DNA from: Mizuhopecten yessoensis
Taxonomy: Eukaryota
Assembly: GCF_002113885.1 (NCBI RefSeq)
Contig: NW_018408827.1
Location: 250,051-314,050 of the forward strand
Direction of reading: 5' to 3'
Length of the DNA stretch: 64,000 nucleotides
Of this stretch, positions 3,412-39,970 are shown in pieces (the stretch's first letter is position 1; the number at the start of each line of letters is the position of its first letter). The position numbers were made by a program, and so were the translations under genes. The notes below the pieces were generated by a model. That model made no database searches, was not told the DNA's origin, and saw only the letters and a program-made list of their open reading frames with translations.

Positions 3412-5768
3412 CTATCCAACAACCATGTTACTATTGGCTGTTTTTCTGACCAAAGTGGGAAGATAATGGTTCCAAAATCGAATCCTCTCTGGGTTAACAT
3501 TATATGCTGGTGCTATGTTGATGTTCAAGTTTTGATATAACCTTCCAACTGAGTCATACCTAGGCCAGTAGGGCACTCCTGGACCGTTCGGCGAGCTGGA
3601 CAAATAAAGGGAGAAGAAAGCAAATACATGCATAGTTATAAGGAAATACAGAAAAAGATCCATCTTGAAGAAGAGCACGTGTAGATGAGAATAAAATATA
3701 AGATAGAAAAATCCTATGCAACCTTTCAAATTCTTCCAGTGCTCCGGATTAAAATTATCTCCCTTCTAAAATTCTAAAATAATTCTTTTTATATCTAATT
3801 ATTCCGAACTCACGGATAATAATCAATTTTTGAATCTTAAATTTGTTACCATATTTCAAATAATTCATTTTGACTGGAAACCATTTGAGAAGTAAATTAG
3901 CATTATTAATTGACTTAATAATAAATTATGATGATAAAATGTCTCGTTGAACAATTTTAATCAAGAATAAGTACATATTTTAACATGGAAAATTATGACT
4001 AATTCAAAAAAGTACTCAAAATTAATTTCTGTAGACACATCAGTTGAATAATTGTTCTAGATTTGCTTACTTTTTCGCATTATTTCGCTCATTTATCCAA
4101 TACAAAAATATGACTCGTGAATAAATTTGGAACCTCTTTTATGTTTCAAATCAAAAAGGTAAGTAGTTCTTAAATTATTCTGTGAAACAAAAACAAACAA
4201 AAATAGACAAACAAGAATACCCACCCTCTCTTTGCAAAATTCGTCCAATATTTGATCATATTAACCGTCAGCATTGCATCAGCCTGAGAATCGGGTTTCG
4301 ATACTGGCCATGGAAGTCTTGGTCCAAAAATATATGGAATCTCGGCGGCATGCCAAGCCCCTTTGAACCAACTTGGCTCCGGGAATGATGTATCGGGATA
4401 TTCTCTGGTAAACATATACTGGTAGGTGTTTCTTCCCATAGTCAGTCCAGGGAGTGAGTGACAGTCTAAAGCTTTGACAGCTGGAGCAACCATAAAGACA
4501 TCCGTGTACATTTCAACGATACTTCTACTCTGCTCAATTTCATCAGTTCTGCTGTATTGCTTACATATAGCGTCGGAAACGTCACTATTCCTGTTATAGA
4601 AATCCTTTGCGATCTCTCGTGCGTATGCATTACAAAGCACTGCCGTCGGAACGGCGCGAGAATAATTAAAATGATATTGTTTTTCGAGGGAAATCATAAA
4701 TTCGTCGTATATAAGGGATCCTTCAGAATCCGTATTGCCAATTATGACATCGAGAGAACGAAAGAAACTGGATTCAATCGACGAGGAATTAGCTATCATA
4801 GCACTGGGATGTTGCTTGATCAGTTCTCCATCGACTACAGGGGCAGTTGGACTGTTAAGTATATAGTTTCCGTACTTAAAAACGTCAGTGTTAATTTGAG
4901 CTTGCATAATTTCTTTTGCATTTTTCCGTCTGAAGCATTCAATTAACTTTTCAGTATCAAACGTTATGTCGTTTTCATTAAGACAATTGAGATAGATACC
5001 GTACCCTCTGGCATATTTTGGGGACTCTACACTTAATGCAAAAGGCACATTTCCTGTACCACTCTCAGCGATGACCCGTTGGAATAGACCTTGATTTTCT
5101 GCAATAAGAGCATGTATTCCGACACTAAACCCTCCGGCAGATTCACCAAAAATTGTTATATAGCTTGGGTCACCACCAAATGCCCTTATGTTGTTCTTTA
5201 CCCACTGCATTGCTAGTCTTTGATCCCACAGCCCGTAGTTACCACGCGAGGCGTTATCCATTGTACTGAGGAATCCTAATATTCCTAATCGGTAGTTTAC
5301 GGTCACCACCACGACATCCCCTACAGTAACAAGGTTAGAGGCATCATAGCCAAACGACTGGCCTAAGGTATACCCTCCACCGTGGATCCAGATCATAACA
5401 CTTTTAGTGTTGTTTAGAGAGGCGTTGCTTGGTGTATAAACGTTTAAATGCAGACAGTCCTCGGACATTTCTGAATTCGGTAAAGAAGGAAAGATATATT
5501 CCGTCCGCTGATAGCAGGACGGTCCAAAAGAAGAACCATCTAAAACATTTGTCCATCTGCCGAATGGAACCGGTTTACGCAGTCTCAGATCTCCGACAGG
5601 AGGTTTAGCATAGGGGATTTTACGGTACTGGTACATCATCTTGCCCCGATTCTGTACACCAATCCCACGAATAGGTCCCGACGCTGAATCAATTGTTCGG
5701 TAACTCTGACTGTTGACCGCAGAGAAACAGGATGCAACAAACAGCAGAACTATAGGGTACCAAACCAT
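3412..5768 (-). CDS. Type-B carboxylesterase CE1 (secreted-type, ~575 aa); coding exons 5768-4225 and 3595-3412
   Basis: Signal peptide MVWYPIVLLFVASCFSAVNS follows acceptor ttatttcag. Motifs IPYAKPP, SEDCL, WIHGGG, NYRLG, FGESAG, NTDSEG, GAWHAAE. Donor AGA GG|gtgggt and acceptor tccag|C give in-frame G-SPNGPGVPYWPRY...NMVVG*. Total 1728 nt, divisible by 3. Confidence 0.93.
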
Positions 5769-7217
5769 ACTGCCAACTGAAATAACAATCCATTGTGACT
5801 TTGATATTTGATTTGCAAATTGCTTATCGAATTGTGTCTCTGTTTTCTTAGTTATGTATCTCGGGTTAAAGCTATCACGCAATATGAACGGAACACATAC
5901 ACAGGCTACTACGCCTTAAACATTTGTAATAAATACAGTAAGCCAAAACTGAATTACGCTGCAAAGTAACGGTCACGTAGGCGCTCATAAATACCAACAT
6001 TCACGACTTATGACTTTAAACTGACAACGAAATCGATAAAGTGCATTTATGCGGTTAGATAATTTGTTCAAATTTTATTCATGAAAAAACCCTGATTGAG
6101 CTGCATTTGTGATTTGAAATACAGTTCCATACTGATATGTACATCTATTTGGTGTTTTGTTTGAAGTAAAAAGAATACTTAGTCCAAATCAGTATTAGAT
6201 TAATAATATGCTTTGTGTACGAGACAATATAAATACCTCTATTGAGGAGAATAACAACAAATGTAATGTAAAATCTAAACATGTGAATAGTGTAAGGTTA
6301 TATAACGATAAAACAGAAATAACATTTCTCACAAAATATTAGAAATAATTGACGTCAAATACGATCCATAAAATAAGCTTGTATTTCTTATAAAAAATCG
6401 TATGAAAACAGTTTTTTGTAAATATGTGCCTTGCAATCAATGATATTAACCACTTTTTAAGGGGATTTGAAAACGTGTTATTTATCATCATCATTAATGG
6501 TGCAACTGTTTCATTGAACTGTGTATTCACAAACAATTCAAGCAATTAGTTGTTGTACTTCATGCTTATATATCATTTTAAATAAAATTGAATTTGGTAG
6601 ATATATGTATTTTTAAAAAAAACAAATTTCATCTTCCTTCAGATTATTTATTGAACAAGTCGGGTTTGATATAAACCAGAAAAGATAATTGAAATTTATT
6701 ATTTGTAAAGAAAACAAATAATTTAACTGAAAAATGAATACAAGTTACTAGCTGAAATTTATTAGGCGTGTAGGCCCACCTAAGGGCACAAAGTCGGAGA
6801 ATGGTTTATGATGATACGTTATATATTCTGGCGAGGTTACAAAACTAACTGATTGGTTTCGAAAGCAAAAGTGTTCTTTCAAATATATGTGTGGATATAG
6901 ATAACTTCCCTACGACATATCGTGTTATTTCTGTTGATTTATTTTACAGGTTGTCTGATTCTTCTTTAACTTTCTGAATTTATACAATTTTCTAGATGAA
7001 TGCATCCTCGAAATTCCAGGGGTAAAGTTCTCTAACGTTCCCTGCGCCCGTGGATTATTTCATGACGAAATCAATACAGATGTCACTAATAGAGCCTTCA
7101 CTTCAAGTTAATATTGTTGACGTTGTAATATGTTTTTATTTTATCAATAAACGTTTTATAGATAAGAAATAAGCATTACTTTCCAAAGTATTGAGATGAA
7201 ATACAAACAACACCTAC

Positions 7218-7332
7218 CTTGATCGACGCCTGTTGTTAACTAGGTACCTGACCGATGGATGAGTAATCTTAATAAACAGATAAGGCATGACCATTAAAGC
7301 CGTTTGGAATATTTGACCTCATCTATATATAT
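7218..7332 (-). promoter_or_regulatory. Candidate TATA and non-coding first exon of CE1
   Basis: TATATATA at ~7324-7331 and minus-strand donor AAG|gtaggt at 7218. The CE1 coding exon starts with an acceptor 8 nt before the ATG, so an upstream exon is expected. Confidence 0.3.
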
Positions 7333-7514
7333 CTTATCATTATATGTATTGTGACATAATCATTTTAAACTACAGATAAACACGCAGAATGACCCATTTT
7401 TTAACATGCTCCCTATAAGGTAGTGTCAAATAATCCCAAACTGATACTGTAAAATAGTTTTAATAAGGAAATGTGAAAAAGACTCGTAGATTTAGATATT
7501 CTAGAAGTCCAAAT

Positions 7515-7645
7515 ATGGTAATGTACCAGTCTTATATGGTAGTGTACCAGTCTTTCTATATGGTAGTGTAACATATTCCTTTATGAAAGTGTAACATTAT
7601 CCTATATGGTAGTGTAATGCGATCCTTTATGGTAGTGTTATTATA
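7515..7645. repeat. Minisatellite (tatatggtagtgtaac-type), left segment
   Basis: At least 5 copies of atggtagtgta at ~20-25 bp spacing. Confidence 0.75.
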
Positions 7646-8523: not shown

Positions 8524-8575
8524 NCAAAAGTTTAATACAGGAAATGTTTGACTTCTCATAGGTGTACATCCTTAA

Positions 8576-10107: not shown

Positions 10108-13075
10108 TTATCCTACAACGACATTTGGAGTATTCTTCACCAGTGATGGAAGGTACTGGTTCCAGAACTGAACCCTATCCAGCGTCACGTGATATTCTGG
10201 TGAAATGTTGCTGTCCAGGCGTTGATAGAGCCCGCCTATTGGGTCGTATCTAGGCCAATAGGGAAGACCGGGACCATTCGGGGAACTGTTGGATGAAATG
10301 ATTGAATCGTTATTTCAAATAAAATCAAATGTAAGTTTTAATTTGGATTTCAAACATTTACAGACGGATTATAGAAAAATCATATTTTCTATTCAAGATT
10401 GACCCAGGAATATTAGCTCAGAATATACATAATACTTTGCCTACTAATCGATTGCAAAATTGCTGATTAATGAAATGTTTCGTGGACCAAACTGAGACAG
10501 AAAGTAATTACGGATTGTCAAGTTGCTCAGAAATAGATCTTGATCATACCTAGACTGTGTTTAAACAAGCACGTGTAAATCTGAACCAAGTTAATAAGAA
10601 AAAGGAAAATACAGCAAAGCTGCAAGGGTACAAAATCTTTCATGAAAATCGCTTAGTGAGAGATGTCAGATAAGTGTCCAAACCTAGAACGGAACGGATC
10701 CCGTATACTTTCATTTATTCTTCATCACATGTTGACTGTTGCCACTGAATAAGTGTCCCAATGTACCAATAATGTAACTTTTTCATTGAACGTTTAAGTA
10801 TCCGCAATTTGGTAATCATCTTAAAACTGCAAAATGTACATTGTATGCATTGAATGGAAAGTACAGTTCTGATTGAACAATTCTAAAAGTGATATTTTCA
10901 CGGGGTTTTCCATGGTTAATTATATATACTGCACTGGTAAAAAATATTGATAGGGGTTTATTTTTTTATTTTTGTACATAGTATGCGGCCTCAATTTACA
11001 ATAAGGTTTTCATGCATGGGGAAGAACCAGAAGTGGAGAAACAGTTAACAGATAAAACCCTTTCAGTATTTCGGGCCGCTTACGACTTGAAATAACCAAG
11101 ATATTTAAACAGGCAAATATTTTGGTAGTTTTATCGAACTATGCATCGTCATCATACAGTGATATTTGCATTTTTCTATGGTTGAATTTTTTGTGGTTTT
11201 CGTCTTATTAAGAATTATGGTCATTTAAGTACGTGCCAGGTTTTGATGGTGAGGGAAATCCTGAGTACCGGGAGAAAAATCACCGACCTGCGGTAATAGT
11301 TGGAGATTGCTCTAAGTAGGCCTTTAACCCGCGATCCAGTCGCAGAGCGCTAGTGAACTCGGCCACCGCAACCCCCTTCTATGTTTTATCATTTTCTTGA
11401 TTGTTATTTGATGTTCAAAGTAATATCGTGTTTTAGATTCCCACTGGAATTCCTCATTGAACTGCTGCAAGAAAAACAAGGTTATGTGAAAGTTATATTA
11501 ACAATATGATACGTTAAAGTGGAAAGGGAAATAATGAACCAACACATACCCGTTCTTAGCAAAGTTGGTCCAATACGTCGTCATGATCAAAGAGAGTAAC
11601 CGATCCACATTGTTTGTAGCACCGTCAAACTTGAACAGATACCTCAGTTCTAAGCCATGTCCCGCCCCAACAAACCATGACGGTCGGTTGTCCATTGTCT
11701 TTGTTACTTTGGTAAACATGAACTGATAAGTATTTCTGCCCATGGTCAGACCGGGGGATGAATGACAGTTGAGCGTGCTGACAGTAGGGGCTACCATAAC
11801 TCCATCAGTGTACATGTTGATGACGTTTCTGCTCTGCTCAACGATATTATTGCTTCTGTACCTTTGACAAATGGCAACAGCAACAGCCTTGTTTCCATTG
11901 AAAAAGTCTTTTGAAAATACCGGCGAAAGCACATCACAGAGAATGCGAGTTGGTATAAAAAGTGAAGCATTGAAATTATATTCAGCTTCTAAGGACTCTA
12001 TGCCGAGGTCGATCAGAAGCGAACCTTCAGCATCTGTATTGCCAAACATGGCATCCAAAGACCGGAAAAAATTTGAACCCGCCGAAGAGATATTGGCCAT
12101 CACATCTTCAGGAAAAGACTTTATAAGATCCCCATCAACTACAGGGGCGTCTTTGAGTGGAATGTTATACTTTGTGTATTTTTTAACATCTAGATTCATT
12201 TGGGCTCGTAGAATTTCTGAAGCAGGTTTTTCTCTCAAACACTGAACAAGTCCAGCAGAATCGACGCTGATATCATTCGCATGGATACAGGTTAGAAATA
12301 TACCATACCCTCTAGAAATGTTCTTCGCCTCTAAACTCAATGCTAAAACAGAATTAGCGGGCCCACTTTCTCCAATTACACGTTGGAACAGGCCTTGATT
12401 TTGTGGGTTAAGCGCATGTAACGCCACACTCATAGAGCCAGCTGATTCCCCAAAAAGTGTTACCGAGTCTGAATCACCACCGAAGGCTGCGATGTTTTGT
12501 TTTACCCATTGAATTGCAAGCAGCTGATCCCATAAGCCGTAATTTCCAAGAGAAGAATCGTCCATTGTACTGAGAAAACCTAGCAGTCCTAATCGGTAAT
12601 TCACCGTGACGACAATAACATCCCCGATATTAGCGAGAGGGGAGGCGTCATATAAGGTCGCCTGTCCTGCAACGTAGCCTCCTCCGTGTATCCAAATCAT
12701 CACACTCTTCTTGTTTGTTGGGGAAGCATTGGAAGGTGTGTACACATTCAGCTGGAGGCAGTCTTCAGACATTTCTCTGTTTTGAAGTGTAGCAGAAACA
12801 TACTTTCGATCTTGTATGCAAGATGGACCAAATGAAGTTGCATCAAGGACATTTGTCCAGCCACCAAATGGAACCGGTTTCCGCAGTCTCAAATCTCCGA
12901 CCGGGGGTTTAGCATAAGGAATATTTCGGTACTGATATACTAATTGGTCTCTGTTTTGTACGCTTATCCCCTTAACCGGTCCAGATGGTGTTCGTATTGT
13001 CTTGTAACTCGCACAATTTGCTACACTCGCACATACTGCCATTAGCACCAGCACAACTGGCGCACATACCGTCAT
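10108..13075 (-). CDS. Type-B carboxylesterase CE2 (secreted-type, ~567 aa); coding exons 13075-11550 and 10285-10108
   Basis: Signal peptide MTVCAPVVLVLMAVCASVANC. Triad FGESAG, NTDAEG, GAGHGLE. Donor AAC GG|gtatgt. Terminal exon (not in ORF track) after aacag reads SPNGPGLPYWPRYDPIGGLYQRLDSNISPEYHVTLDRVQFWNQYLPSLVKNTPNVVVG*. AATAAA on the minus strand at 10058-10053. Confidence 0.93.
11175..11378 (-). mobile_element. Degenerate tRNA-derived SINE in the CE2 intron
   Basis: The minus strand starts ggggttgcggtggccgagtt (A-box-like), then cgcgggttaaaggcc (decayed B-box) and a gcaggtcggtgatttttctcccggtactcagga core. A related decayed core lies at 27090-27215. Confidence 0.6.
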
Positions 13076-14059: not shown

Positions 14060-14134
14060 CGGATTTCGCACATACGACATTATTTATAACTTTATGTCAA
14101 TGCAGATAGTATTATCAGTTAGTGTAAAAGTAAA

Positions 14135-17591: not shown

Positions 17592-19857
17592 ATGGGGATG
17601 ACGATTGCAATATGGCTTCTAATGATGTCATTCATAGCATCTGATGTGGATTGTCAAATATTCAATAGTGTGAACACATCGTTGGGACCTGTAAGGGGAC
17701 TGAAGACATCTGTCCTAACCGGAAACATATACCAGTTCCGTGCAATTCCTTATGGAAAAGCTCCGATGGGAGAACTAAGACTTCGCAAACCGGAACCATT
17801 CGGGAAATGGTCTGGAACCTATGATGCAACGAAATTCGGTCCAAGTTGTGTGCAGGATATGAATACATTTAGAGTTGGAGATAATTTCTTACCCAACTAC
17901 AACATCTCCGAAGACTGTTTGCAGCTCAATATATTCGTTCCAACATCAGCGTCTCCTACCAACAGGAAGTCTGTGATAGTGTGGCTGTACGGTGGTGCTT
18001 TTGTGTCTGGACAAAGCGGTCTGTACGACGGTTCTTATTTGACCTTTATTGGTGACGTCATAGTGGTCACTTTGAACTACCGTGTTGGTATTCTAGGTTT
18101 TTACAGTACAGGGGATGACGCTGCACCTGGTAACTATGGACTGTGGGATCAGTTACTGGCAATAAGATGGATAAAAGACAATATTGAGGCTTTTGGTGGA
18201 AATTCTAACTCCATAACACTGTTTGGCGAATCAGCAGGAGCTATGAGCGCGTCTATTCATGCTCTTAACCCAAACAATAAAGGACTCTTCCACAGGGCAA
18301 TCTTTGAGAGTGGAACAGCGAATCAGGAAGCCGCATTTAACCTTGAGATTCCTGCATATGCTCAAGAGTATGGTATTCTTCTTAACTGCACAAATGATAA
18401 CAACAAACACCCTAACACAACTGAGATGGTGGATTGCATTCGCACAAGATCCGTACAAGAAATATTAAAAAGTCAACAAGAGCACGTGGTGAAGAAATAC
18501 GGTGAGTTCATCCTGGATTTCAGCATATTCCCGGTAGTGGACGGAGACCTAATTCCAATTCATCCCATGATTATTATTAAGAATGCCTCCTCGCCAGCAT
18601 ACCAGTTCCTTCAATCTCTTGATGTTATTGGAGGAACAAACAGCGGAGAAGGCTCACTGTTGATAGATTACCATGGGAAAAGCATGGAAAGGCTTTGGGG
18701 ACTGAACTTAACAGAGGGCATATCAACTGACGATTTCTGTTCCAAAATAGCAACAGAAATTGCCAAGGACTTCTATCACAACCGTTTGCATGTAGCTAAG
18801 GAGATTTGTCTGATGTATACGTCTGATGTTAGTGACCAAGACCAAGCACTAAATGTTACTAAGATGTATGGCGATATGGTGATGCAGGCTCCAACTGTCT
18901 CCTACCTTGACAGACATGCCAAAGACAACACACAAAGCAACACATTCCAGTATCTTTTATCCCATGAAAACTGTATAAAGTACCACCGGGATCCATCTTG
19001 GTTCAAGGGTTTTCCACACGCCAGTGACCTGCCCTACTTGTTCAGGCCAAATTACATTGGTACACTGATCAATGCGGATTGTCCTGAGGATACGAAATTG
19101 TCTGACAGATTTATCAAATACTGGAGTAATTTTGCGAAGACTGGGTATGTATTTCTACATTTCAGAAAGAACATTGGCTGTGTGTTTTAAGAAACTACTA
19201 GATATTGAATGAGATGGTATCAAAACTTTTATTTGATTAAATATCATGTTTTGTAATGTTCTGGAAAGAATCAATTATCAATCATAAGCATTTGGTTTTT
19301 GTATTCCATTATTCACATAAACATCAACACTTAAATAGGCGAGAACTAAAATGCATTTACCTTCATAGAAAAGGAATTCACAGTTTCTAAATTAATATAT
19401 TAATAGATATGAAAAGTTCCAGATAAAATATTCTCGGATCAACCTTACGAAATAAAATGACATTTTCGCTAACTTATCTCTTAAAACACTGACCTTCAAA
19501 GTTCTGAAATTTATAAAAGAATAACTGATCGTGCTTTAACTCGTTGGATATACATGTATATGTATGTATATCTATTTTAAAAGCGATCCGAACGGTGCTG
19601 GACTACCGGACTGGCCTATGTATAACCTGACGAGTTATAGGTACTTGAACCTGAACAACAACGCCACTGATGAAGGAAGATTGTATTGGGATAGAGTTCA
19701 ATTCTGGAACATCCACTTACAATACGCAAGGATGGACAAAATAAACAGCAGTGACACGCAAATCAACGGCAGCTATAGCCAGATTCATTATAGCAGCATC
19801 GTCTACATTGTAACAGCACTGCTCGTGGTCTTCCTGGTGCCGAGAGGCGTGCTGTGA
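17592..19857 (+). CDS. Type-B carboxylesterase CE3 (~608 aa, hydrophobic C-terminal tail); coding exons 17592-19144 and 19584-19857
   Basis: Acceptor tttcatag at 17586, then signal peptide MGMTIAIWLLMMSFIASDVDC. Motifs WLYGGAF, FGESAG, TNSGEG, GFPHASD. Donor ACT GG|gtatgt, acceptor aaag|C GAT CCG. AATAAA at 19985. Confidence 0.93.
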
Positions 19858-23184: not shown

Positions 23185-25223
23185 ATGGAACGTAGCACGT
23201 TCATATTACTGTTCGTGACTGGTTTTGTAAGCTGTGTCCAGTGTACCATCTTTAGGACAGTGCGTTCACCGTCCGGACCAATTAAGGGGATTGGTGTACC
23301 TTACCAAGGCAATACGGTATTTCAATACCGAAATATTCCTTATGCTGAACCTCCATTGGGAAATCTGAGGCTACGGAAGCCGGTGCCACACCGAACATGG
23401 ACGGAGGTTTTAGATGCAACAATGTTCGGTCCTTCATGTAGTCAAGACATTGCCCGTATTAAAAGTATCCTTCAAAAACTGCCCAATAGAAACTTTTCTG
23501 AAGACTGTTTGCAACTCAATGTGTATACACCCAACATCGCCTCATCACAAAACAGAAAGAGTGTCATGATATGGGTCCACGGGGGAGCCTACATGTTAGG
23601 ACAGGCCTCATTATATGACGCAACACTTCTAGTAACTGAAGGAGACGTTATAGTAGTCACAGTGAATTATCGTCTTGGAGCACTTGGCTTTCTCAGTACA
23701 GGCGACGATGCAGCACGTGGGAACTACGGTCTATGGGACCAACGATTGGCTTTTGAATGGGTGAAAAATAACATTGCATCTTTTGGCGGTGATCCTGACA
23801 CGATGACCATATTTGGGCAATCAGCGGGAGCCTTTAGCGTAGGCCTCCACGCCATGATGCCAATGAACAGAGGCTTATTTACAAGGATAATTTCTGAAAG
23901 TGGAGGACAAAGTTCTAACATAGCTGTCCGATCAGATCCAAAACCTGTTACATTTAGATACGGTCGTGCGATCAACTGCATAAAAAATGCAGACAATCAA
24001 ATTGATACGGCAGCACTTCTTCAATGTCTTAGGGAGAAACTACTGACGAAATAATCGAGGCACAACTAAACCTCAACTCCACTGTGTATGGGGGCGATTA
24101 TAGTATCGAATTTATGCCAGTTGTTGACGGAATTTTAATTAGGGCAATGCCCGAGGTTTTACTTTCGAATTCCGCATCTGAGGAAAACAAGTTCTTCAGA
24201 TCGTTAGACGCTATATACGGTACATCAAACACGGAGGGAATTAGCGCAACCATTGTCGCTTATGGTTTGCAAAAGAGGTACGGATTCAATGCCACGCTTG
24301 AAATTCCTAACATTGTTCTACATGACGAGTTTGCACCAACCATTTCCCGGCTTTTCTACAATAACAACGAGCAAGTGTCACGTGCTATTTATGATGAATA
24401 CAGTAGTGAGGATACGCTTGAGCAGAGTAAGAATATGTTGGATTTGTTCACAGATTATGTATTTCTTGCTGCAACAGTCGGAGCGCTAAACTCACATTCA
24501 CTTGCTGGTTCTGTCCCATCGGGAAATACTTTCCAGTATTTATTTACTGGAGAGGGTATTATTGAAGGCCCGTTTGTTCTTCCTGTATATTTCAAAGGAG
24601 CGTGGCATGGAGCAGAATTGTCTTTCCTTTTCGGCTTAAATGGTCCAGGGAATGTGCTGAACAAAACTGCGGATGGAAATGCTCTAAGAAAAAAAATGAT
24701 TTCCTATTGGACCAACTTCGCTAAGCATGGGTAGGTTAACTTTAAACAACTATTCATATTAAATGCAACTTTTTTTATCAATTATTATGTGATAACTTCA
24801 GCATGTTTCACATTTAATTGTGCAGGAAATACGTATCATGTACGTAATGTATATTTTATTCTGATTTTGGTATATTGGTATGTATGTATCTATGTCCCTA
24901 GTTTTGTATATTTGAGCAAGAAACTCAAACCAAACTATACTTAATTTCAAAATAACTATAGTGATATGATATTATCATCAATGTTTTAAACAGTTATGAC
25001 GAAATAATAAGTACAGATGATGTATTTTTTATAATTATTCAGCAACCCAAATGGTAAAGGACTCCCCCGATGGCCTACCTACGACCCAATGACAGCTGAG
25101 TACTTAAACATCAATACAGTATCATCAACAGGAAGTCACGTGGCCGCGGATAGAATGAGGTTTTGGAATTGGTGCATCCCGTCACTACTAAAAATCGGAT
25201 CCAATACCATCGTAGGAAAGTAA
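23185..25223 (+). CDS. Type-B carboxylesterase CE4 with a 1-bp frameshift at ~24037-24039 (sequence error or young pseudogene); coding exons 23185-24730 and 25043-25223
   Basis: ORFs 23185-24054 and 24084-24734 join if one A is added to GAG AAA (A)CT ACT GAC, giving LREKTTDEIIEAQLN. Motifs FGQSAG, SNTEG, GAWHGAE. Donor CAT GG|gtaggt. Terminal exon reads NPNGKGLPRWPTYDP...FWNWCIPSLLKIGSNTIVGK*. AATAAA at 25434. Confidence 0.88.
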
Positions 25224-27084: not shown

Positions 27085-27215
27085 GGGTCTGTGTGTGGTG
27101 GGAAACAAACGTATCTGGAGAAAACCCCCATGGTCGGGCAGATGACCCATAACTTTCATGTCTAAAATCAGTTAATCGATCCCGCATGGATGTCTAAAGG
27201 CGAGTGCGTTAACGT
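27085..27215 (-). mobile_element. Highly decayed SINE remnant
   Basis: The ggaaac...tatctggagaaaacccccatggtcgggcagatgaccc core resembles that at 11250-11295. Confidence 0.4.
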
Positions 27216-27661
27216 TTTGTACCGCGAAAACTGACTAACCATAATATAGGTGATATTACGCATTACATACGTGATATAACATACAAAAAACTCATATGAT
27301 AGTGCCTTTTCACTGTATAGGCTGGTTATCTGTGTGACAAAAAGTAGTGACACTTACATTTGGCAGAAGACGATCGAACGTGTAAGGACCCGAGCTTTGT
27401 ATTAAAAAATAAACACCAATAACATTTGAACACATAGAATATTTTTTTGACTGGAATCGTTCCGTATCATTACAACAATATGCCAACGACTTGAGCACAT
27501 TAGGCCTAACACCGACGCAAATTCTCTTCTTTATTAATTAAATTAATCAAACAATTAAAATTTAGGTATCTGTCGGTACAATCTGGAAACCTAGTCATCT
27601 TAAGGTTATAGGCGAATAAACCCCGTGTTATTTTCAAGTAAAAATATCATTAAATCTACAG

Positions 27662-30600
27662 ATGTATTTTGGACTGCTGGAGATGATGGTTGTGATGTCA
27701 GTGCTCCTATCGGAAAGTCGATCTATTCCTGTCGTACAAACCACGATGGGTTTAGTAAGGGGACTTACAAGAAGGGTAGACCGTACGTATATATTCGAAT
27801 TTAGAGGAATTCCATTCGCAAAGCCTCCAATCGGAAAATTCCGATTCCGTAAAACAGAAGCACATGATCAATGGAATGGATTATTGGACGCCACTACTTT
27901 TAGACCGGCATGCATGCAAAGGATACATGCCGATTCAATATTACCCCTGCCAAATACGGAAATCTCTGAAGACTGTTTAACATTAAATATATATGTCCCT
28001 GGTAATATATCGTACGATTCCAGAAAGAGTGTTATGGTTTGGATTCACGGGGGAGGGTTTTATACCAACCAAGGCTCTATGTACAATGGGACGTACATTG
28101 CCTTATATGGAGATGTTATTGTGGTGACAGTTAATTACCGTCTGGGAGTGCTAGGGTTCCTGAGTACGGGAAACAAGGACCTCCCTGGGAATCTCGGACT
28201 CTGGGATCAGCACCTGGCTCTACAGTGGATTAAGGACAACATAGCTTCATTCGGAGGCGATCCTAATTCCATTACTTTATTTGGCATGTCGTCGGGAGGG
28301 GCTAGCGTTTCCCTCCACACGCTCATTCCTCGAAACAAACACTTGTTTCAAAGGGTTATTGCACAGAGTGGAACAGCAAACTCGTACCTAGCCTTTGTGT
28401 ATGATCCTTTATTCTATGTTAAGGTACTTGGGAAATTATTAGGCTGCACGAGTGACACCGAAGCTACGGACACAAAACAGTTCGTACACTGTATTAATGG
28501 AACTTCAGCAGAGGCTATTCTGTCAGCTCAGGAGGCTATGTCATGGCATAGAGGTGACAGAGCACGCTATGAACTGATGTTCGGGGCAGTTGTGGATGGG
28601 GACGTCTTCACAGACTATCCAGAGGAATTGCTAAGTCGCGAAACATCTGCGTCATTTCAACTTTTCCGTTCTGTCGACTTTCTCGCAGGCGGAACAGACA
28701 AAGAAGGATCGATGTTCTATGGTATCTTTCATGAAGAATTATCAAAAGAATTTAATTTCAACCCAATGGATGGCTTTCCACCAGGTATTGTGTGTGAATT
28801 CTTAATTCCTGGTTTAGTTAAAGATCTTTTCCCAAAATGTTTACATAGACGTGTTCTAGAACAAGCGATCTGTCAGAAATATCGCGGGACTGATGACGGA
28901 TCGCGCGCAAGTAAAATGCTGGATTTATATGGTGACGTGTTTTTTATTGTACCTGTAATTAAGATACTCAGTGCACATTCCAAGGATAATTCAATAACAA
29001 ATAGCTACCAATACCTGTTTTCTCGTCATTACACATCAAAGGAAGACTCAACACTACCTGATTGGTTTGTTGGCACCCCCCACACTGCCGAAAAAACATT
29101 CCTGTTCAGAGGAACTCAGAGATCCAACATAGCTTACAACAGGATAGAAGATTTAACATTAGCCAAACAGATGATTAAACTCTGGACAAACTTCGCAAAA
29201 TATGGGTGAGACTTTCTTTTATCGCAGTTTGTATAGATGTTACAGCATTGAGAGACCTGACAATGAATTCCATAAATATAGGTGTAGGAAATAGCGATCT
29301 TCAAATATCTTAATTAAGCATTGGTAAGTTGGAAATCCTAACGTACAATTTTGTTGACATGTCAGTATCCTTGTTGCTTATATTTGATATCATCCACACA
29401 TACACATTATCGAATTTATTCATCTATCATATAGGTTTTCACTTATTTGCAGTTATGAATTTTGCGCTACTGGAAAACAAAAATAATCTTACACAGACAC
29501 CTTTCTATAGAAGTTGTATCATAAATATTGGGTCTGATTTTTTTTTTATTTCATACGAGATTTACGAAAAGTACAAGTTGTTATCTTATAGAAGTTCTGT
29601 CGAGCTAATCAGAAAGCCTCGTGCTCGTTTAAAAGGTCTCATATGGGGAAAATGTATTCAAACCCCTTTCTATGACACTACCAAGAATGTATGTGGACAT
29701 TCTCGAAAAACACTGTTTCAATGACCATCGTTACGTCTTCAAATTCTCCACTTTCAGTTCATGTTTATTTGTATTAACAGTGAAATGGCGCCATGTACAA
29801 ATTATAGATTGTGTTTTTTCTAATACATTAAGTAATACATGTACGTAGTAAAAATACAAATTGCATTGATACAGTCCACATAGGAAAATATAACTATGTT
29901 ATATGATATATAGAAGTAGTTTTTTTTAAATTTGTCAGAACACGTTCACAAATTCTAATACGTTAAACTGTTGACTACATGTACAAGTATACACAATGTA
30001 TCCCTTCTCTCTGTAACATACATGTAGATGTCACTGACAGGGTATGCTGTGAGATAGTTAAATAGTAACATGTATGAGGGTATGTAACACAGTTCCGTTT
30101 AAACATATTCTCCAAATTACGTATACATAGTCCTCCTCGTTCATTCCTAGTAGTCACGTGACAATGTAGATTTGAGGCGGGGATAACTTTTCGGAACCAA
30201 ACCGCTGGAAAATCTTTGTTTTGTCAATTAGGAAAAAGTCGTACCCTTTATGACTTGTCCGTTAACAGTATTAAATCAACTCAAGAATAATATGTGGAAT
30301 ATCTCAAATTGACGTATTGATGAATTTATTAACAATACTGCGAAGAAAGTGACGTAAGGTCATAGTCAGGTCAAGAAAATAATAACCTCAGCTTTACATT
30401 AGCCAAGCAAAATCGACGGATTTCATTAATGCCACAGCTTTGTGTAGCAATAACCGTAGGGATTCTATGTTTCATGTGGATTTGATATTTACTGTTTTCG
30501 TTTAATAAAGAGAATGTATTTGTCATTTTTTGAGTTACTACTACACACGAGCTTGGCAATATAATGTCTTCTTTGACATAGTAAACAGAACAATTATTCA

Positions 30601-33600
30601 TTTTATTGTAAAAAAAAAAATGGACTGACGGAACATCTGTTATGAAGCGAAGGACCATTAAAGACTGTATATAAAGGTATCCTTTTCATATTTAACTAAT
30701 AATATAAAATATAATCTAATATGAATATTTCAAACCACAAAAAAATGATTTCCCGCAAATCAATTTGTTACTGTGTGTAAATCAACGAAATACCAGATCA
30801 GCGAATAAATACTACAGTAAATGTGTAATATTATCGCTATTTGCATTAGTAAGAAGTATTACGGTCAATATAAGAAAAGGGAAAAATTATAGGAACCGGA
30901 AGTGGGCAGTGGATGCATGCTGGGTACTCACTGTGATCTTCAGAGCGTCTTCATTTTTGGTTCCCATTTGGTCTCACTTCTTGATTCGGAAAAAAAAAGC
31001 ACGCAATAAAATCTTAACAGTTTTTATGACTTTATTTCAAGTGTCGAATATTAGTACAACATATGAAGTATTTCAAATTGACATTCAACAAAAAACGGCC
31101 ATACTTACAAATACGTACCTTTCTGCCATCTTCTCTTTGTCTTTCATTAAACGCGTTTTATTTTCTGTCAGAGATGGGGAGGGGTTATTCACACAGAGAG
31201 TAAAGTTGAGAAATAGACAGACAACAATAACAGTCACGAAAAATTGTACATATATTAATTCAGCATCCTGTAATAACGTTTTTTAAATCGTTCAAATTAT
31301 GACGCAAGTACTTTGATAATGTTCAAAACATTATTCGCTTTCGTTAACTCATTGTTTTTTCTTTGAAGTATTTCCATATTTTACAGAAAAGTTTCATTAA
31401 ATGTTACATTAAACAATATGAGAATTTGAAAACAAGCTGGTCAACTTATAATAAACACATATGTTTTCTGTTTTATGCTGCTGTGAAAGACATGAATATA
31501 TAAATCTGAGTAAATAACTAAAATAAGTTTATTCGCGGATGACACTGGCTTATTTGCATTTTGTGAAGTCACAAAGTTAAAAAGAAGCATGAGATCGATT
31601 ATTAATTAATTCTGTAAAATAACTATTAAAACTCTGCTTCAAAAGTCTAAATTTTTCATTCTATGCAAAATATATATGCAGACCAGTGACAACAAATAGT
31701 CATAAGTTTGATTAAGGCTTCTGTATGATTAGCTTGCAATTGGTAACATGATAATTACAGGATAAAAATAGATGTACATGTTTCGTGGGGCAGTGGGGAC
31801 ATGCTGGGGACTTACGGTGCTTTTCTTTCTTTCTGTCTTCTGTCGCTCTTCGTCTGCCTCCTCTAATGTTATCTTTAACGGTTTAACAGTCACGGTCCTG
31901 AAAAAATGTTATTAGAAGAAGAGAGTATTATATATTCTTGAAAACGGAACAAATCGCCAAGTTACAAGCTTGAAAGTATTATTGAAAAAATATAATGCAG
32001 TCGTAAACTAAAGACTCATAAATATACACGACGATCCAATAAAATATAAAATTCGTGTAAACGAAAACGTGTATGTCCCAACGCATACGTATACCCTGCC
32101 AACCTGCTGATACCCTCGGACAGATCAGGACCATTTGGTGTAATTTGGGCCCATAACGTATCAGAGGCTCCCTTGTTGAATAGTTTGCTGCATGGGGGAA
32201 GGTGGATGGGTGGATGGGTATCAGAGGAAGGAAGGAGAGTTGGGGTTGGGTGTGGGTAGGGTTGGGGACGTGGAGTTCAGGGTAAGTAAAGACAGTACTG
32301 AAGTAAAACATAATTTTCTAAAAGTAGTTTTTCCATATTTGCACCCCTCCGCCTTCACTCACTTCTCTCCTCTCTATGTTGATTTTATAATGGCGTAAGG
32401 TGTAAGGTCAGGATTCTATAACCTATGCTACATTACCTATACGTTATAGCTACATGTACATGTATATGTTCTAGTAGTTCTCGCCGAGTATAAGTTTCCT
32501 CAGGGCTTAATGTAATTGTTTTTGGATGCTGTGTGGCCCAACGGCCAATATCGAAATCTAATATTACACGGAGACATACATTGATAGTAAACGTGTACGG
32601 TGCGATTTCCACGGGCATCTGAGCGGGTGTTTTACCTGGTTCGACACGTGTAGTACACGTGTATATCATACTTACCTGTATTCTCACTTCTGCAAGTCTT
32701 TTATCACATTTAACAAAATCTTCCACAAAATGCTTCAATAGTTTAGTATACACTGGATTCACTAACAGTTTTAAGGCGCTGTTATTATGGTGATACGCAC
32801 ACGCCCTCCCCGTTAGCAAGTCTCTCGAATTCAAGGCCATTGTGTGTATCCGTTGAGGTGTTACCTCCCCTTGATTCTCTGTTTTTTTATAAAGTCTTCC
32901 CGATATCAGGGGTCCACTTTGATAAATACGAAAATGTTTTTTTTAAATATATTTGTTTTAGGATTTGTTGACAAATTTATATGAGATGCAACAAAGGCGT
33001 TCAGGCAATTCAGCCTGGTTATGCCGCTATTTCCCTTAAAGTCAATCATCTTGCAAAGTGGTACATGTATATTTGTTTATGGATCGGTAGACAACTCTAT
33101 GGGGAAAAACATCTGTTTTATTGATACATCGTCTTTTTGTCTGTATCTGTGTAATATAAGTGTCATTTGACACTAGTTTTTTTTCAGGTGTATCACAATT
33201 TCACTTTCAGATTTTCGCCCAAATTTCCATCAACCTTTGAAAGAAAATATGATATAATAAGAAATTGATTTGCTTGGCATTAAATCCAGCGGTAAGCTAC
33301 AATGTTTAACTTTGTTTGCCAAGTTCGTGCTTCTACTGAAAAAATAACCAAACAAAATAAGAAAAAATATTTATAACAAACAAAAAAATTAATTGTTTTC
33401 TGAACCATTCTGCCGATCTGTTAACACCTTTTCCTTTATGTTGCAGAAACCCAAGCGATATCACATTACCGAAATGGAGCCCATATACGGAAGATGACGG
33501 ATACTTCTATAATATAAGCTTCGTCCCAGCCTCCTCATCTACGCATGTGTTCCGGGACAGAGTATCCTTCTGGATGTCGGAGGTTCCCCAAATCGTCAAG

Positions 33601-33627
33601 GCGACGTGTCAGCACCAGGAACTATAA
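27662..33627 (+). CDS. Type-B carboxylesterase CE5 (~574 aa, ends HQEL); coding exons 27662-29205 and 33447-33627
   Basis: Acceptor ctacag lies directly before the ATG. Motifs WIHGGGF, atypical FGMSSGG, TDKEG, GTPHTAE. Donor TAT GG|gtgaga, then a 4.2 kb intron and acceptor ttgcag|A AAC CCA. Terminal exon (not in ORF track) reads NPSDITLPKWSPYTEDDGYFYNISFVPASSSTHVFRDRVSFWMSEVPQIVKATCQHQEL*. AATAAA at 33835. Confidence 0.9.
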
Positions 33628-37862: not shown

Positions 37863-39970
37863 ATGATGCAAGCTGTGGTACAGATCTTCGTGACGTTTGG
37901 TTTAGTGGTAGGAATAACCGGACAAAACACGAAGGTCATTACAACCCCCTCCGGTCAACTGCGGGGTCTAGTCACTCTAGCTAATAATTCTATTGTGTAT
38001 CAGTTCAGGAATATTCCATATGCAAAACCACCGATTGGTGAGCTTCGATTTGCAAAGCCAGTGGAATATGGTTCTTGGCCTGGCATCCGTGATGCAACTG
38101 CTTTCGGTCCCGCTTGTACTCAGAGTGTTAATGGAGTTACATACCAGAACGTCTCTGAGGACTGCTTGACCCTAAATGTATACGTACCAAAGAATATGCT
38201 TGGCAACAGGACAGTCATGGTCTGGATACACGGTGGTGGATACATCAAAGGAGAAGCCGCCATATTCGACGGGTCTTACCTTGCTTTACGTGGCGGTTTG
38301 GTAGTTGTCACAATTAATTACCGATTGGGTGTTTTTGGCTTTCTCAGCACTAACGATACTGTCATTCCTGGCAATAATGGTCTATGGGATCAGCAATTAG
38401 CGCTGAAGTGGTTAAAAACTAATATCAAAGCATTTGGAGGGAATTCAGAATCCGTGACAATATTTGGTGAATCTGCCGGTGGGTTCAGTGTAGGACTTCA
38501 ATCAATAATTCCCCAAAACAAAGGACTATTCCATAGGGCTATTGCTCAGAGTGGGGCCGCGCCTTCCTTTTTGACCATTGTGCATCAACCGCTGTTATTT
38601 ACCGTGTCGTTTGGAGAAAGAGTAGGGTGCCATTTCATTACTAGTAATTCGCCAATGTTTCTAAAATGCCTGAAAAGCAAGACTGCTAAAGAGCTTCTAA
38701 ATGCCCAGATCAACGCCTCAGCTCCTGTCTCATTGACGCCATTCTCTTTTGGACCAGTTATTTCCCCGGTGGTCGACAAAGAGTTTTTACCGGATGTCCC
38801 TTCAGCTCTCATGAAGAACAAGTCATCGGAATCCTACCAATTCTTCCGAACTCTTGATTTCATGGCGGGAAATGTCAACCGAGAAGGTTCGATTTTCATC
38901 AACAAATACCTTTATAATTTCTCGCAGATTTTCCATTTCGTTCCCGAAAAAGGAGTACCAAATGCTGTCGTATGTAACGTTTTGGCACCTGGTGCTGTAA
39001 GTGCCTTCTCCAAAAGTATCGTCAAAAACAAAACAATTGAAAAAGAAATCTGCGACGAATACAAAGATGATGATCCTGAACTAGAGGGAAACAAAATGGG
39101 CGATCTTTTTGGTGATGCGTTTTTCGTGGTCCCGTCTGTAGTAGCTCTGGATGTTCACTCTGACGGGAACAATATGACCAATACTTTCCAGTACATATTC
39201 AACCGACGGAATCCCGCCATGAGGGGGAATGGTCCGTACCCGCACTGGTTCACGGGTGCTCCTCATGCGTCGGATAACGTGTTTCTCTTCGGAATTCAGC
39301 AACTGGCACAACGGATACACGTCTCTGATGCAGATCTCAATCTGTCTGCGCATATGCAACAGTATTGGGCGAATTTCGCCAAGACTGGGTAAGATTTATG
39401 TATCTATAAAGCTACGGATAACTTCGTAATGATGGTACAGCTATAACAGTAAAAGTTATCTTTACTAAATAAAAAGTGTATGCGAAGTTTTTGATGACAA
39501 TGGCAAGTTCGGCAACTTAAACGACAAAGGTGAGAAATTATTTGAGCATACTGAAAATACATGTCGATAAATTGACAATAAATGTATTACATTGTATATA
39601 TACATCTTATATCTATATATTATCTAGGTTGGTAACCAAATAAGAACGAAATATGATATGCTAATTTCAATACAATTTTACATTACTCTCAAAAAAGGGT
39701 TTTAATAACCGTATCACTAAGTATCATTATAAATAAACTAACACTGTTTAGACGCATACATCGACACTACTTCCATACATTTGAAATACCAAGTCAATAA
39801 ATCCAAGCAATATTATTTCCAGGAAACCGTTTGCTGATGGTTCTGCGAATTGGCCATATTACGACAGAACCAGTCGGTCATACCTCAACTTGGATGACGT
39901 CATTTCCGCAAAGGAGCACATCTTTTTAGACAGGGTTACGTTTTGGACTGAGAAAGTGCCTATTTTCTGA
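37863..39970 (+). CDS. Type-B carboxylesterase CE6 (~557 aa); coding exons 37863-39388 and 39823-39970
   Basis: Signal peptide MMQAVVQIFVTFGLVVGITG. Triad FGESAG, NVNREG, GAPHASD. Donor ACT GG|gtaaga. Terminal exon (not in ORF track) reads KPFADGSANWPYYDRTSRSYLNLDDVISAKEHIFLDRVTFWTEKVPIF*. AATAAA at 40004. Confidence 0.92.

What the first reader, a model, noticed from the sequence alone, without database searches (positions are those of the whole stretch)
3412..39970. Six-gene esterase array in which a small terminal exon gives paralogs different candidate subcellular addresses
Seen: all six genes have one large catalytic exon, an identically placed phase-2 intron (WxNFAKxG|) and a 148-274 nt last exon. 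The ends differ: NMVVG* (CE1), NVVVG* (CE2), a hydrophobic tail (CE3), TIVGK* (CE4), HQEL* (CE5) and EKVPIF* with no tail (CE6). Known: vertebrate ACHE obtains GPI, tailed and soluble forms from alternative last exons, and mammalian CES enzymes use HxEL for ER retention. Inference: this locus achieves similar compartment coverage (secreted, cell surface, ER lumen) by gene duplication plus divergence of the last exon. It would form a compact esterase battery along the secretory pathway.
Basis: partly seen in the sequence, partly recalled or inferred. Interest (0 to 1): 0.75.

Follow-up and report, generated by a model that had tools for sequence, protein, structure and literature searches.

The report
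Six scallop esterase genes, different tails
A scallop chromosome carries six neighbouring carboxylesterase genes whose last few amino acids differ in ways that probably keep one enzyme in the endoplasmic reticulum, tie one to a membrane and let four be secreted, which is the same trick already known from mammalian carboxylesterase gene families.

Summary
The window (Mizuhopecten yessoensis, scaffold C5500) carries six PF00135 carboxylesterase genes.

Corrections:
- CE4 is frameshifted in the window, but three other runs carry one extra A there, so CE4 is intact.
- The last exon is not an address module. Its first ~47 codons finish the catalytic domain, and only 2-45 residues beyond that differ.
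- The intron is family-wide, in at least 34 such genes in this genome.
- Each gene has one terminal exon. There is no ACHE-like alternative splicing.

Junctions are shown by RNA for CE4 and CE5, by database models for CE1, CE3, CE5 and CE6, and by orthologues only for CE2.

HQEL is an HXEL-type ER retrieval signal. It is HLEL in the Argopecten orthologue, and a KDEL-receptor gene is present. The CE3 tail looks like a GPI or membrane anchor signal, but its conservation is not shown.

CE1, CE2 and CE4 share a hydrophobic-hydrophobic-Gly(Lys) end that recurs in scallops, mussels and an oyster and is unexplained.

The same tail classes recur across bivalve carboxylesterases, and mammalian CES paralogues work the same way. 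This is a new member of a known kind, of moderate to low interest.

The parts
4225..5768 (-). CE1 large exon: ATG at 5768, signal-peptide-like N-terminus, catalytic domain up to the split Gly codon
   Evidence: ORF. PF00135 at E 1.2e-124 covering profile 5-470 of 515. GESAG, Glu and His motifs present. 100% identical to P0121.
3412..3595 (-). CE1 last exon (184 nt): end of the catalytic domain plus tail ...RKTANSNMVVG*
   Evidence: P0121 residues 516-575 are 100% identical.
11550..13075 (-). CE2 large exon
   Evidence: PF00135 at E 3.5e-123. No M. yessoensis database model was seen. Orthologues P0023, P0123 and P0016 are 72-74% identical.
10108..10285 (-). CE2 last exon (178 nt), tail ...KNTPNVVVG*
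   Evidence: Orthologues carry the same two parts contiguously. P0021 is 566 aa on an 1889-nt contig, so it has no intron.
17592..19144 (+). CE3 large exon (oxyanion motif YGGA instead of HGGG)
   Evidence: P0033 is 100% identical.
19584..19857 (+). CE3 last exon (274 nt): end of the domain, Ser/Thr/Asn-rich linker, hydrophobic stretch IVYIVTALLVVFLVP, then RGVL*
   Evidence: P0033 residues 519-608 are 100% identical. Maximum 13-residue hydropathy is 3.06.
23185..24730 (+). CE4 large exon. The window lacks one A in the A-run behind 24036, which breaks the frame. Other runs have that A.
   Evidence: An extra A is present in X1, X15 and 2 of 2 X19 reads. GQSAG, Glu and His motifs are found across the two pieces.
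25043..25223 (+). CE4 last exon (181 nt), tail ...KIGSNTIVGK*
   Evidence: The RNA joint skips 312 nt with GT..AG ends, in one X1 contig and 6 X19 reads. Weak PF00135 match to profile 473-515. Orthologue P0040 ends SAIVGK.
27662..29205 (+). CE5 large exon (nucleophile motif GMSSG)
   Evidence: P0001 is 100% identical. X1 contigs cover 27660-29205.
33447..33627 (+). CE5 last exon (181 nt), tail ...QIVKATCQHQEL*, behind a 4241-nt intron
   Evidence: The X1 loose end at 29205 equals the exon's first 30 letters. P0001 ends QHQEL and the Argopecten orthologue P0002 ends GHLEL.
37863..39388 (+). CE6 large exon
   Evidence: P0162 is 100% identical.
39823..39970 (+). CE6 last exon (148 nt). It ends two residues after the conserved FW....P, at ...FWTEKVPIF*
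   Evidence: P0162 residues 510-557 are 100% identical, and P0008 ends KKVPIF.

Best explanation
This is an old tandem array of six secretory-pathway type-B carboxylesterase paralogues in the Yesso scallop.

Each gene keeps the architecture of its family. One large exon encodes the signal-peptide-like N-terminus and about 90% of the alpha/beta-hydrolase domain. It is followed by one phase-2 intron and a short exon that finishes the domain and adds a C-terminal extension of 2-45 residues.

Whole-gene duplication was followed by divergence of only those last residues, giving four kinds of end:
- **CE5** ends H-Q-E-L. It is inferred to be retrieved to the ER lumen by the KDEL receptor, as mammalian CES1 and CES2 are.
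- **CE3** carries a polar linker plus a hydrophobic stretch. It is inferred to be a GPI-attachment signal, or failing that a single-pass anchor, putting the enzyme on a membrane surface.
- **CE6** stops right after the fold and is inferred to be secreted by default.
- **CE1, CE2 and CE4** end hydrophobic-hydrophobic-Gly(-Lys). They are secreted, possibly with further C-terminal processing.

Shown: gene structures, junctions for five of six genes, intact catalytic motifs, and conservation of the ends among scallop orthologues. Inferred: every localisation.
For: **Family and catalytic motifs:**

**Junctions:** RNA joints for CE4 and CE5. Database models for CE1, CE3, CE5 and CE6.

**The last exon is part of the fold:**. 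Six columns are invariant in the six-tail alignment, and all divergence lies after FW....P.

**Whole-gene duplication:** exon-1 and tail-exon identities run in parallel, for example CE1/CE2 at 59% and 64%, and CE1/CE5 at 39% and 35%.

**Age and conservation:** in a 35-row tree (quick search, SH-aLRT support), each of the six genes sits in its own clade with support of 99-100 together with proteins of Pecten, Argopecten or Ylistrum, or with unnamed contigs. End types are kept within clades:
- CE1 clade: VVG, VLG, VLG, LFG.
- CE2 clade: VVG, VVG, VVG, LLG, LLG.
- CE4 clade: IVGK, IVGK.
- CE5 clade: HQEL, HLEL.
- CE6 clade: VPIF, VPIF.

**HXEL function in mammals:** PMC5818367 passages.

**Receptor:** a KDEL-receptor gene lies on C5488, covering profile 2-143 in two pieces.

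**Chance of a KDEL-like end:** 0.0002-0.0003 per gene.

**The same classes recur in the family:** of 123 retrieved homologues with a tail, 37 end in EL, 30 have a hydrophobic end by my threshold, and 18 end hydrophobic-hydrophobic-G[KR]0-2. Of 27 further tail exons read in this genome, 7 end K[TI]EL, 9 are hydrophobic, and 3 end IGK, IIG or IFG.
Against: - No localisation was measured, and no SignalP, NetGPI or DeepLoc run was possible.
- The CE3 hydrophobic tail is not shown to be conserved. Its only named orthologue (P0198, Pecten maximus, a partial 293-aa model) ends NDDNGT soon after the exon-1 boundary, and P0196 is exon 1 only.
- The CE3 hydrophobic run is followed by RGVL, which also fits a membrane span with a tiny cytoplasmic tail.
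- CE5 has GMSSG instead of GESAG at the nucleophile elbow, and CE3 has YGGA at the oxyanion site, so the enzymatic equivalence of the six is unproven.
- The CE2 junction rests on orthologues only.
- Of two raw-read RNA runs, one gave 31 reads and the other none, so expression level and tissue are unknown.
- The database models for CE1, CE3 and CE6 may be predictions without transcript support.
Confidence: 0.75

Rival explanations
1. The different ends are neutral drift after duplication. All six enzymes are simply secreted (or all behave alike), and HQEL and the hydrophobic tail have no sorting effect.
For: Tail class is labile in the family, with at least 28 changes of class on a 116-row tree. 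The CE3 tail is not seen in its Pecten model. One paralogue elsewhere has KTEL buried by an extension, KTELKIDRK.
Against: The ends are kept within every orthologue clade where a tail is known. A KDEL-like end is expected in about 0.001-0.002 of six genes by chance. [quoted passage not shown] A seven-gene array on C3775 keeps K[TI]EL in all copies, one of them with an extension after KTEL.
Confidence: 0.1
2. One reading: the terminal exon works as an exchangeable address module comparable to the alternative H/T/R exons of vertebrate ACHE, so that exon choice or exon exchange sets the compartment.
For: The intron is identically placed in all six genes. Elsewhere in the genome (C76583, C1714) a phase-2/phase-2 exon made of a tail fused to the next catalytic domain exists and is skipped in the database model P0193. 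So splicing between units of an array does occur in this family.
Against: There is one terminal-exon homologue per gene. A single junction is seen for CE4 and for CE5, with no depth in the first 690 nt of the CE5 intron. The exon encodes about 47 residues of the fold. Tail-exon similarity follows exon-1 similarity.
Confidence: 0.04
3. CE3 is a type-I membrane protein (a membrane span with a four-residue cytoplasmic tail), not a GPI-anchored one.
For: The hydrophobic run is followed by a basic residue (P-R-G-V-L). Several family members end the same way, for example ...ILRRL...LFRSR and ...VKRIF.
Against: The run is only about 15-17 residues long and lies at the very end. It is preceded by small residues (N-G-S, S-S) at about 8-10 residues, which is the layout expected of a GPI signal (recalled rule, judged by eye, no predictor). 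GPI-type cholinesterases are known (reference titles seen in PMC2289553).
Confidence: 0.25

Closest known systems
Mammalian CES1/CES2 carboxylesterase paralogues (HXEL ER-resident forms against secreted Ces1c, CES4 and CES5)
   Same: Same Pfam family (PF00135). Solved CES1 chains align over P0001 residues 21-558. They are lumenal enzymes with a cleavable signal peptide. Paralogues differ by having or lacking a C-terminal HXEL retrieval signal, which decides ER residence against secretion (PMC5818367, passages). CE5 ends HQEL.
   Different: Scallop genes have two coding exons, whereas the mammalian genes have many (recalled, not tested). The array also holds a hydrophobic-tailed member and a hydrophobic-hydrophobic-Gly class. 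No enzymology or localisation is known for the scallop proteins.
Vertebrate acetylcholinesterase with alternative 3' exons (GPI-anchored H form, tailed T form, read-through form)
   Same: Same fold. Solved AChE and BChE chains align to P0001 up to residue 563-569. The C-terminal peptide decides anchoring. A hydrophobic GPI-signal peptide is one of the options (reference titles in PMC2289553).
   Different: ACHE is one gene with alternative exons placed after the catalytic domain. Here there are six genes with one last exon each, and the intron lies inside the domain at profile position about 472 of 515.
Other carboxylesterase arrays of the same genome and of other bivalves
   Same: Same exon-intron plan in at least 34 large-exon matches. 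The same end classes occur: K[TI]EL, hydrophobic, hydrophobic-hydrophobic-Gly, and short.
   Different: The C3775 array (7 genes) is uniformly K[TI]EL and C5265 (3 genes) is uniformly hydrophobic. Only C5511 mixes two classes. The window's array mixes four classes within 37 kb.

Membership tests
Type-B carboxylesterase/lipase family (Pfam PF00135, alpha/beta hydrolase) | Profile match above the curated cut-off (27 bits) | tested here: met
   All six genes score 412-442 bits. CE4 scores 326 and 70 bits in its two pieces.
Type-B carboxylesterase/lipase family (Pfam PF00135, alpha/beta hydrolase) | Catalytic Ser in G-x-S-x-G, an acidic residue, a His, and an oxyanion-hole Gly motif | tested here: met
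   Motifs found by pattern search in all six. Variants are GQSAG (CE4), GMSSG (CE5) and YGGA (CE3). Activity was not tested.
Type-B carboxylesterase/lipase family (Pfam PF00135, alpha/beta hydrolase) | Entry into the secretory pathway (cleavable signal peptide) | tested here: inconclusive
   All six N-termini have a hydrophobic core about 10-15 residues long after the first Met. This was judged by eye. No signal-peptide predictor is on hand.
KDEL-receptor clients with an HXEL-type retrieval signal | The extreme C-terminus is H-x-E-L (or K/R/H-D/E-E-L) | tested here: met
   CE5 ends HQEL followed by a stop at 33625-33627. The annotated protein P0001 ends the same way. The other five genes do not.
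KDEL-receptor clients with an HXEL-type retrieval signal | The signal is conserved in orthologues | tested here: met
   1 of 1 orthologue with a known tail keeps it (P0002, Argopecten, HLEL), in a clade with support 100. The sample is small.
KDEL-receptor clients with an HXEL-type retrieval signal | The receptor is present in the organism | tested here: met
   PF00810 matches on C5488, at 102 and 94 bits, together covering profile 2-143.
KDEL-receptor clients with an HXEL-type retrieval signal | ER residence that depends on the tetrapeptide | not testable with these tools
   Needs expression of CE5 with and without HQEL.
GPI-anchored proteins | C-terminal signal made of small residues at the attachment site, a short polar spacer and a terminal hydrophobic stretch | tested here: inconclusive
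   The CE3 tail reads ...INGSYSQIHYSS + IVYIVTALLVVFLVP + RGVL, with hydropathy 3.06 over 13 residues. The layout fits by eye. No GPI predictor is on hand, and a membrane span is not excluded.
GPI-anchored proteins | Release by PI-PLC or loss of the hydrophobic peptide in the mature protein | not testable with these tools
   An experiment is needed.
ACHE-type alternative last exons | Two or more alternative 3' coding exons per gene | tested here: not met
   There are six terminal-exon homologues for six genes. One joint is seen for CE4 and one continuation for CE5.
ACHE-type alternative last exons | The variable exon begins after the catalytic domain | tested here: not met
   The intron lies at profile position 470-472 of 515. 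Residues 516-563 of P0001 align inside solved catalytic domains.

The most novel reading that the evidence does not exclude
The three 'plain' ends (NMVVG, NVVVG, TIVGK) may not be default ends but a fourth conserved C-terminal signal.

Ends of the form hydrophobic-hydrophobic-Gly, optionally followed by Lys, Arg-Lys or Arg plus a few residues, recur in several places:
- all 11 members of the CE1, CE2 and CE4 clades;
- four more genes of this genome (AIGK, IIIG, VIFG, IVG-RGTE);
- Mytilus (CIFG, CVFG, CILGRK);
- an oyster (PIVG).

The linker before the motif varies freely. Gly, Gly-Lys and Gly-Arg-Lys are what carboxypeptidase trimming followed by peptidylglycine alpha-amidation would need (recalled rule). 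The copper monooxygenase family that includes that enzyme is present in the genome, although the match is not specific to it.

If this is right, secreted bivalve carboxylesterases would carry a C-terminal amide or another Gly-dependent mark. The array would then encode four, not three, distinct C-terminal fates.
Probability: 0.12. Interest if true: 0.6.

Novelty: new member of a known kind. Interest (0 to 1): 0.3.

Why it matters
The finding gives a clean, checked annotation of a six-gene esterase array in an aquaculture species. It includes one assembly or allele error that hides an intact gene (CE4), and one gene for which no M. yessoensis protein appeared in the three protein searches (CE2).

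It shows that bivalves sort their many carboxylesterases by the same C-terminal logic as mammals: HXEL/KDEL-like retrieval, hydrophobic anchor signals, or neither. That matters when esterase activities are used as pollution biomarkers in different tissue fractions.

It does not reveal a new mechanism. The one feature not yet explained is the conserved hydrophobic-hydrophobic-Gly end.

Tried and rejected
**Checks that led nowhere or gave little**
- Pfam on the six tail exons alone: only CE4's gave a weak PF00135 match (E 0.058). The other five gave nothing useful.
The neighbour's identity stays unchecked.
- An ORF in the CE5 intron (30765-31286): no family.
- Earlier findings of the scan: nothing for this place or these words.
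- Literature: I found no paper on the C-termini, localisation or gene structure of scallop or bivalve carboxylesterases in five searches, and none on amidated carboxylesterases. I saw listings and abstract starts only, except passages of PMC5818367 and reference titles in PMC2289553. Subscription journals are not covered, and supplements were not opened.
- CE3 orthologue tails: the third protein search returned only an exon-1-only ORF (P0196) and a partial Pecten model (P0198).

**Errors and limits**
- In one search I translated CE2 one base out of frame. It shows as a branch of length 10. That row is wrong, but the rest of the tree and the count of 28 changes were made with it present. One search uses the right frame.
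- The 'careful' tree did not finish in time. The printed tree is the quick one with SH-aLRT support only.
- My tail classes rest on thresholds of my own (hydropathy at least 2.0 over 13 residues; regular expressions). 18 rows were reassigned by hand.
- Rows left out of the tree were 22 named ids (fusions, non-molluscs, odd ends), all exon-1-only or anchor-less proteins, and proteins outside 530-650 aa.
- Same-contig statements for other scallops rest only on equal 'longest_contig' lengths.
- The spliced proteins were never joined by me. Exons were searched apart, and the joined step was left out. Full-length comparisons used database proteins as returned.

**Considered and rejected**
- CE4 as a pseudogene.
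- Exon shuffling.
- Extra alternative terminal exons.

Full report
**What is there.** The window is scaffold C5500:250051-314050 of the Mizuhopecten yessoensis assembly.

Seven of its nine ORFs of 150 aa or more are carboxylesterase pieces. They make six genes: CE1 and CE2 on the minus strand, and CE3 to CE6 on the plus strand. No further PF00135 match lies on C5500.

Each large exon matches Pfam PF00135 at E 1e-123 to 1e-132, but only up to profile position 470-472 of 515. All carry a G-x-S-x-G nucleophile elbow, an acidic residue, a His and an oxyanion motif. The variants are GQSAG in CE4, GMSSG in CE5 and YGGA in CE3. All start with a hydrophobic, signal-peptide-like N-terminus. This was judged by eye, because no predictor was available.

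**Gene structure.** All six large exons end W-x-N-F-A-K-x-G, with the Gly codon split GG|GT.

| Gene | Intron (nt) | Coding last exon (nt) | End |
|---|---|---|---|
| CE1 | 629 | 184 | NMVVG* |
| CE2 | 1264 | 178 | NVVVG* |
| CE3 | 439 | 274 | ...IVYIVTALLVVFLVPRGVL* |
| CE4 | 312 | 181 | TIVGK* |
| CE5 | 4241 | 181 | HQEL* |
| CE6 | 434 | 148 | EKVPIF* |

All acceptors are AG behind a pyrimidine-rich stretch. A local tblastn with five tail peptides finds six homologous terminal exons in the window, one per gene, and no spare ones.

**Transcript evidence.** I laid four runs on 23900-29899.
- X1 behaves as RNA. It has depth on exons only, and none in 25300-27299 or 29300-29899.
- X15 behaves as DNA, with even depth in all 30 bins and no joint.
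- X19 (raw RNA reads) gave 31 reads.
- X24 gave none.

The CE4 intron is spliced exactly as predicted. The joint skips 312 nt with GT..AG ends, in one X1 contig and in 6 X19 reads with 4 starts.

An X1 contig ends on 29205 and runs on with 30 letters that equal the start of the predicted CE5 last exon at 33447.

Database proteins of this species equal exon 1 plus one residue plus the tail exon at 100% identity for four genes: CE1 (P0121, 575 aa), CE3 (P0033, 608 aa), CE5 (P0001, 574 aa) and CE6 (P0162, 557 aa).

No M. yessoensis protein for CE2 or CE4 was among the 237 proteins returned by the three searches, each of which lists only its best 120. For CE2 the junction rests on orthologues with the same contiguous two parts. 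These are P0023, P0123 and P0016, plus P0021, whose 566 aa sit on an 1889-nt contig and so cannot hold an intron.

I never joined exons myself. The spliced step was left out, and exons were searched apart.

**A correction: CE4.** X1, X15 and 2 of 2 X19 reads all carry one extra A in the A-run behind 24036, and that restores one frame. So the break is an assembly error or a private allele, and CE4 is an intact, expressed gene. This may also be why no CE4 protein turned up in the searches.

**What the small exon is.** It is not a separable address peptide. An alignment of the six tail-exon translations shows homology over the first ~47 residues, with six invariant columns. The sequences diverge only after the motif FW....P.

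CE4's tail exon gives a weak PF00135 match to profile 473-515. Residues 516-563 of P0001 align with the last residues of solved butyrylcholinesterase and bile-salt lipase catalytic domains.

The truly variable parts beyond the fold are:
- CE6: 2 residues.
- CE1, CE2, CE4 and CE5: 12-14 residues.
- CE3: 45 residues.

The intron is also not special to this locus. In a six-frame search of the genome, 34 long PF00135 matches, plus CE4's two pieces, start at profile position 2-6 and stop at 472-479 or read on through stop codons. In addition, 74 of the 237 retrieved proteins are ORF calls that end exactly at the same Gly.

Tail-exon identities follow exon-1 identities. Examples are 64% against 59% for CE1/CE2 and 35% against 39% for CE1/CE5. 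This is what whole-gene duplication predicts, and it argues against exon exchange.

**Age.** In a 35-row tree built on exon-1-equivalent columns only, each of the six genes has its own clade with support 99-100, together with proteins from Pecten, Argopecten or Ylistrum, or from unnamed contigs. This is a quick search with SH-aLRT support, because the careful search did not finish.
- CE1, CE2 and CE4 form one clade (support 98).
- CE3 joins a wider clade (support 96).
- CE5 and CE6 group with another scallop lineage (support 92).

The six duplications therefore predate the split of these scallop genera.

Orthologues appear to share scaffolds, judged only by equal contig lengths:
- Ylistrum, 2,077,977 nt: CE1-like twice, CE2-like and CE4-like.
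- Argopecten, 51,162,219 nt: CE1-, CE2- and CE5-like.
- Pecten, 60,076,705 nt: CE1/2-, CE3- and CE6-like.

**Are the ends functional?** Within clades the end type is kept:

| Clade | Ends seen |
|---|---|
| CE1 | VVG, VLG, VLG, LFG |
| CE2 | VVG, VVG, VVG, LLG, LLG |
| CE4 | IVGK, IVGK |
| CE5 | HQEL, HLEL |
| CE6 | VPIF, VPIF |

One Pecten model in the CE6 clade has an odd truncated end.

*HQEL.* It fits the HXEL variant of the KDEL retrieval signal. [quoted passage not shown] From the composition of these proteins, a KDEL-like end is expected in 0.0002-0.0003 of random ends. A KDEL-receptor gene is present in the genome.

*The CE3 extension.* It has a Ser/Thr/Asn-rich linker, small residues (N-G-S) about 8-10 positions before a 15-17-residue hydrophobic run, and then R-G-V-L. 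That is the layout of a GPI signal (recalled rule, by eye). A membrane span is not excluded. I could not show that the tail is conserved. The only named orthologue is a partial Pecten model that ends soon after the exon boundary.

**Family context.** The same classes are everywhere in the family.
- Of 123 retrieved homologues with a tail, 37 end in EL (35 of them [KRH]-x-E-L), 30 have a hydrophobic end by my threshold, and 18 end hydrophobic-hydrophobic-G[KR]0-2.
- On a 116-row tree, tail class changes at least 28 times. One row of that tree was mis-framed.
- I read 27 further tail exons on 13 other contigs of this genome:

| Class | Number of tail exons |
|---|---|
| End in K[TI]EL | 7 |
| KTEL followed by an extension | 1 |
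| Hydrophobic | 9 |
| End IGK, IIG or IFG | 3 |
| Ends IVG-RGTE | 1 |
| Short or other | 3 |
| Run without a stop into the next catalytic exon | 3 |

- The seven-gene C3775 array is uniformly K[TI]EL and C5265 is uniformly hydrophobic. C5511 mixes hydrophobic and short ends.

What is particular to the window is therefore only that four classes sit side by side within 37 kb.

**Comparison with what is known.** The closest analogue is the mammalian CES family, where paralogous genes differ by an HXEL end. It is not ACHE, where one gene chooses among exons that lie after the domain. Both defining features of the ACHE mechanism were tested here and not met. I found no paper on bivalve carboxylesterase C-termini in the held library. 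The verdict is a new member of a known kind.

**What remains odd.** The ends of CE1, CE2 and CE4 belong to a recurrent motif, hydrophobic-hydrophobic-Gly, optionally followed by Lys, Arg-Lys or Arg plus a few residues. Its chance per end is about 0.011. It is seen in:
- all 11 rows of the three clades;
- four more genes of this genome;
- Mytilus;
- an oyster protein.

The preceding linker varies. Gly, Gly-Lys and Gly-Arg-Lys are the forms a carboxypeptidase-plus-amidation route would use (recalled). The genome holds 19 matches to the copper monooxygenase family that includes the amidating enzyme, but this family is not specific to it. I rate a Gly-dependent C-terminal signal as a low-probability but real lead.

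Noticed in passing
window 24030-24040: The reference lacks one A of an A-run. An RNA-like run, a DNA-like run and 2 of 2 raw RNA reads all have it. The loss splits CE4 into two frames, and may explain why no CE4 protein of this species was returned by the protein searches.
   Followed up: yes
window 34337-35982: A minisatellite of about 1.6 kb built on a 17-nt unit (CTACCACCTGTCTATAG), with higher-order periods of 34, 74, 188, 256 and 330. It lies between CE5 and CE6 and causes the strong negative GC skew of 34-36 kb. A short inverted block of the same unit lies at 34045-34130.
   Followed up: partly
window 27369-27661: An RNA-like contig covers 27369-27553, upstream of CE5. The CE5 contig starts at 27660, two bases before the ATG. 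A GT at 27566 and an AG at 27660-27661 would allow a 96-nt intron in the 5' UTR. No joint was reported, so a non-coding first exon of CE5 is only a possibility.
   Followed up: partly
G000 C76583:28392-39855 (+) and C1714:455443-459941 (-); loci L011, L017, L025, L030, L031: In another carboxylesterase array, the 'tail exon' runs with no stop straight into the next large catalytic exon. That makes a 544-codon exon with phase 2 at both ends. If included, it would give a protein with two or more esterase domains ending in a hydrophobic tail. The database model P0193 (605 aa) skips it, joining unit 1 to the final tail. The two contigs may be haplotypes of one locus.
   Followed up: partly
proteins P0121, P0122, P0019, P0024, P0023, P0123, P0016, P0021, P0040, P0009, P0050, P0054, P0080, P0135, P0169, P0234; G000 C370:418348, C76747:1010341, C5493:1169430, C5485:463352: A recurrent C-terminal motif, hydrophobic-hydrophobic-Gly, optionally followed by K, RK or R plus 2-3 residues, in scallop, mussel and oyster carboxylesterases. 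The linker before it is variable.
   Followed up: partly
proteins P0097 and P0093 (Mytilus galloprovincialis): They show 8 mismatches over the first 554 residues, then diverge completely after ...WSNQLP into a hydrophobic tail and a short polar tail. Close relatives end RDEL. They could be alternative 3' ends of one gene, or very recent paralogues.
   Followed up: no
protein P0003 (Pecten maximus, 859 aa): The model joins a CE2-like N-terminal fragment (residues 17-241, 81% identical to CE2) to a complete CE1-like protein (residues 294-859). It is either a fused annotation of two neighbours or a real two-domain product like the one above.
   Followed up: no
The neighbour's identity was not confirmed.
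   Followed up: partly
G000 C3775:43684-119625: An array of seven carboxylesterase genes, all ending K[TI]EL. One has the signal masked by an extension (KTELKIDRK, equal to P0056).
   Followed up: partly
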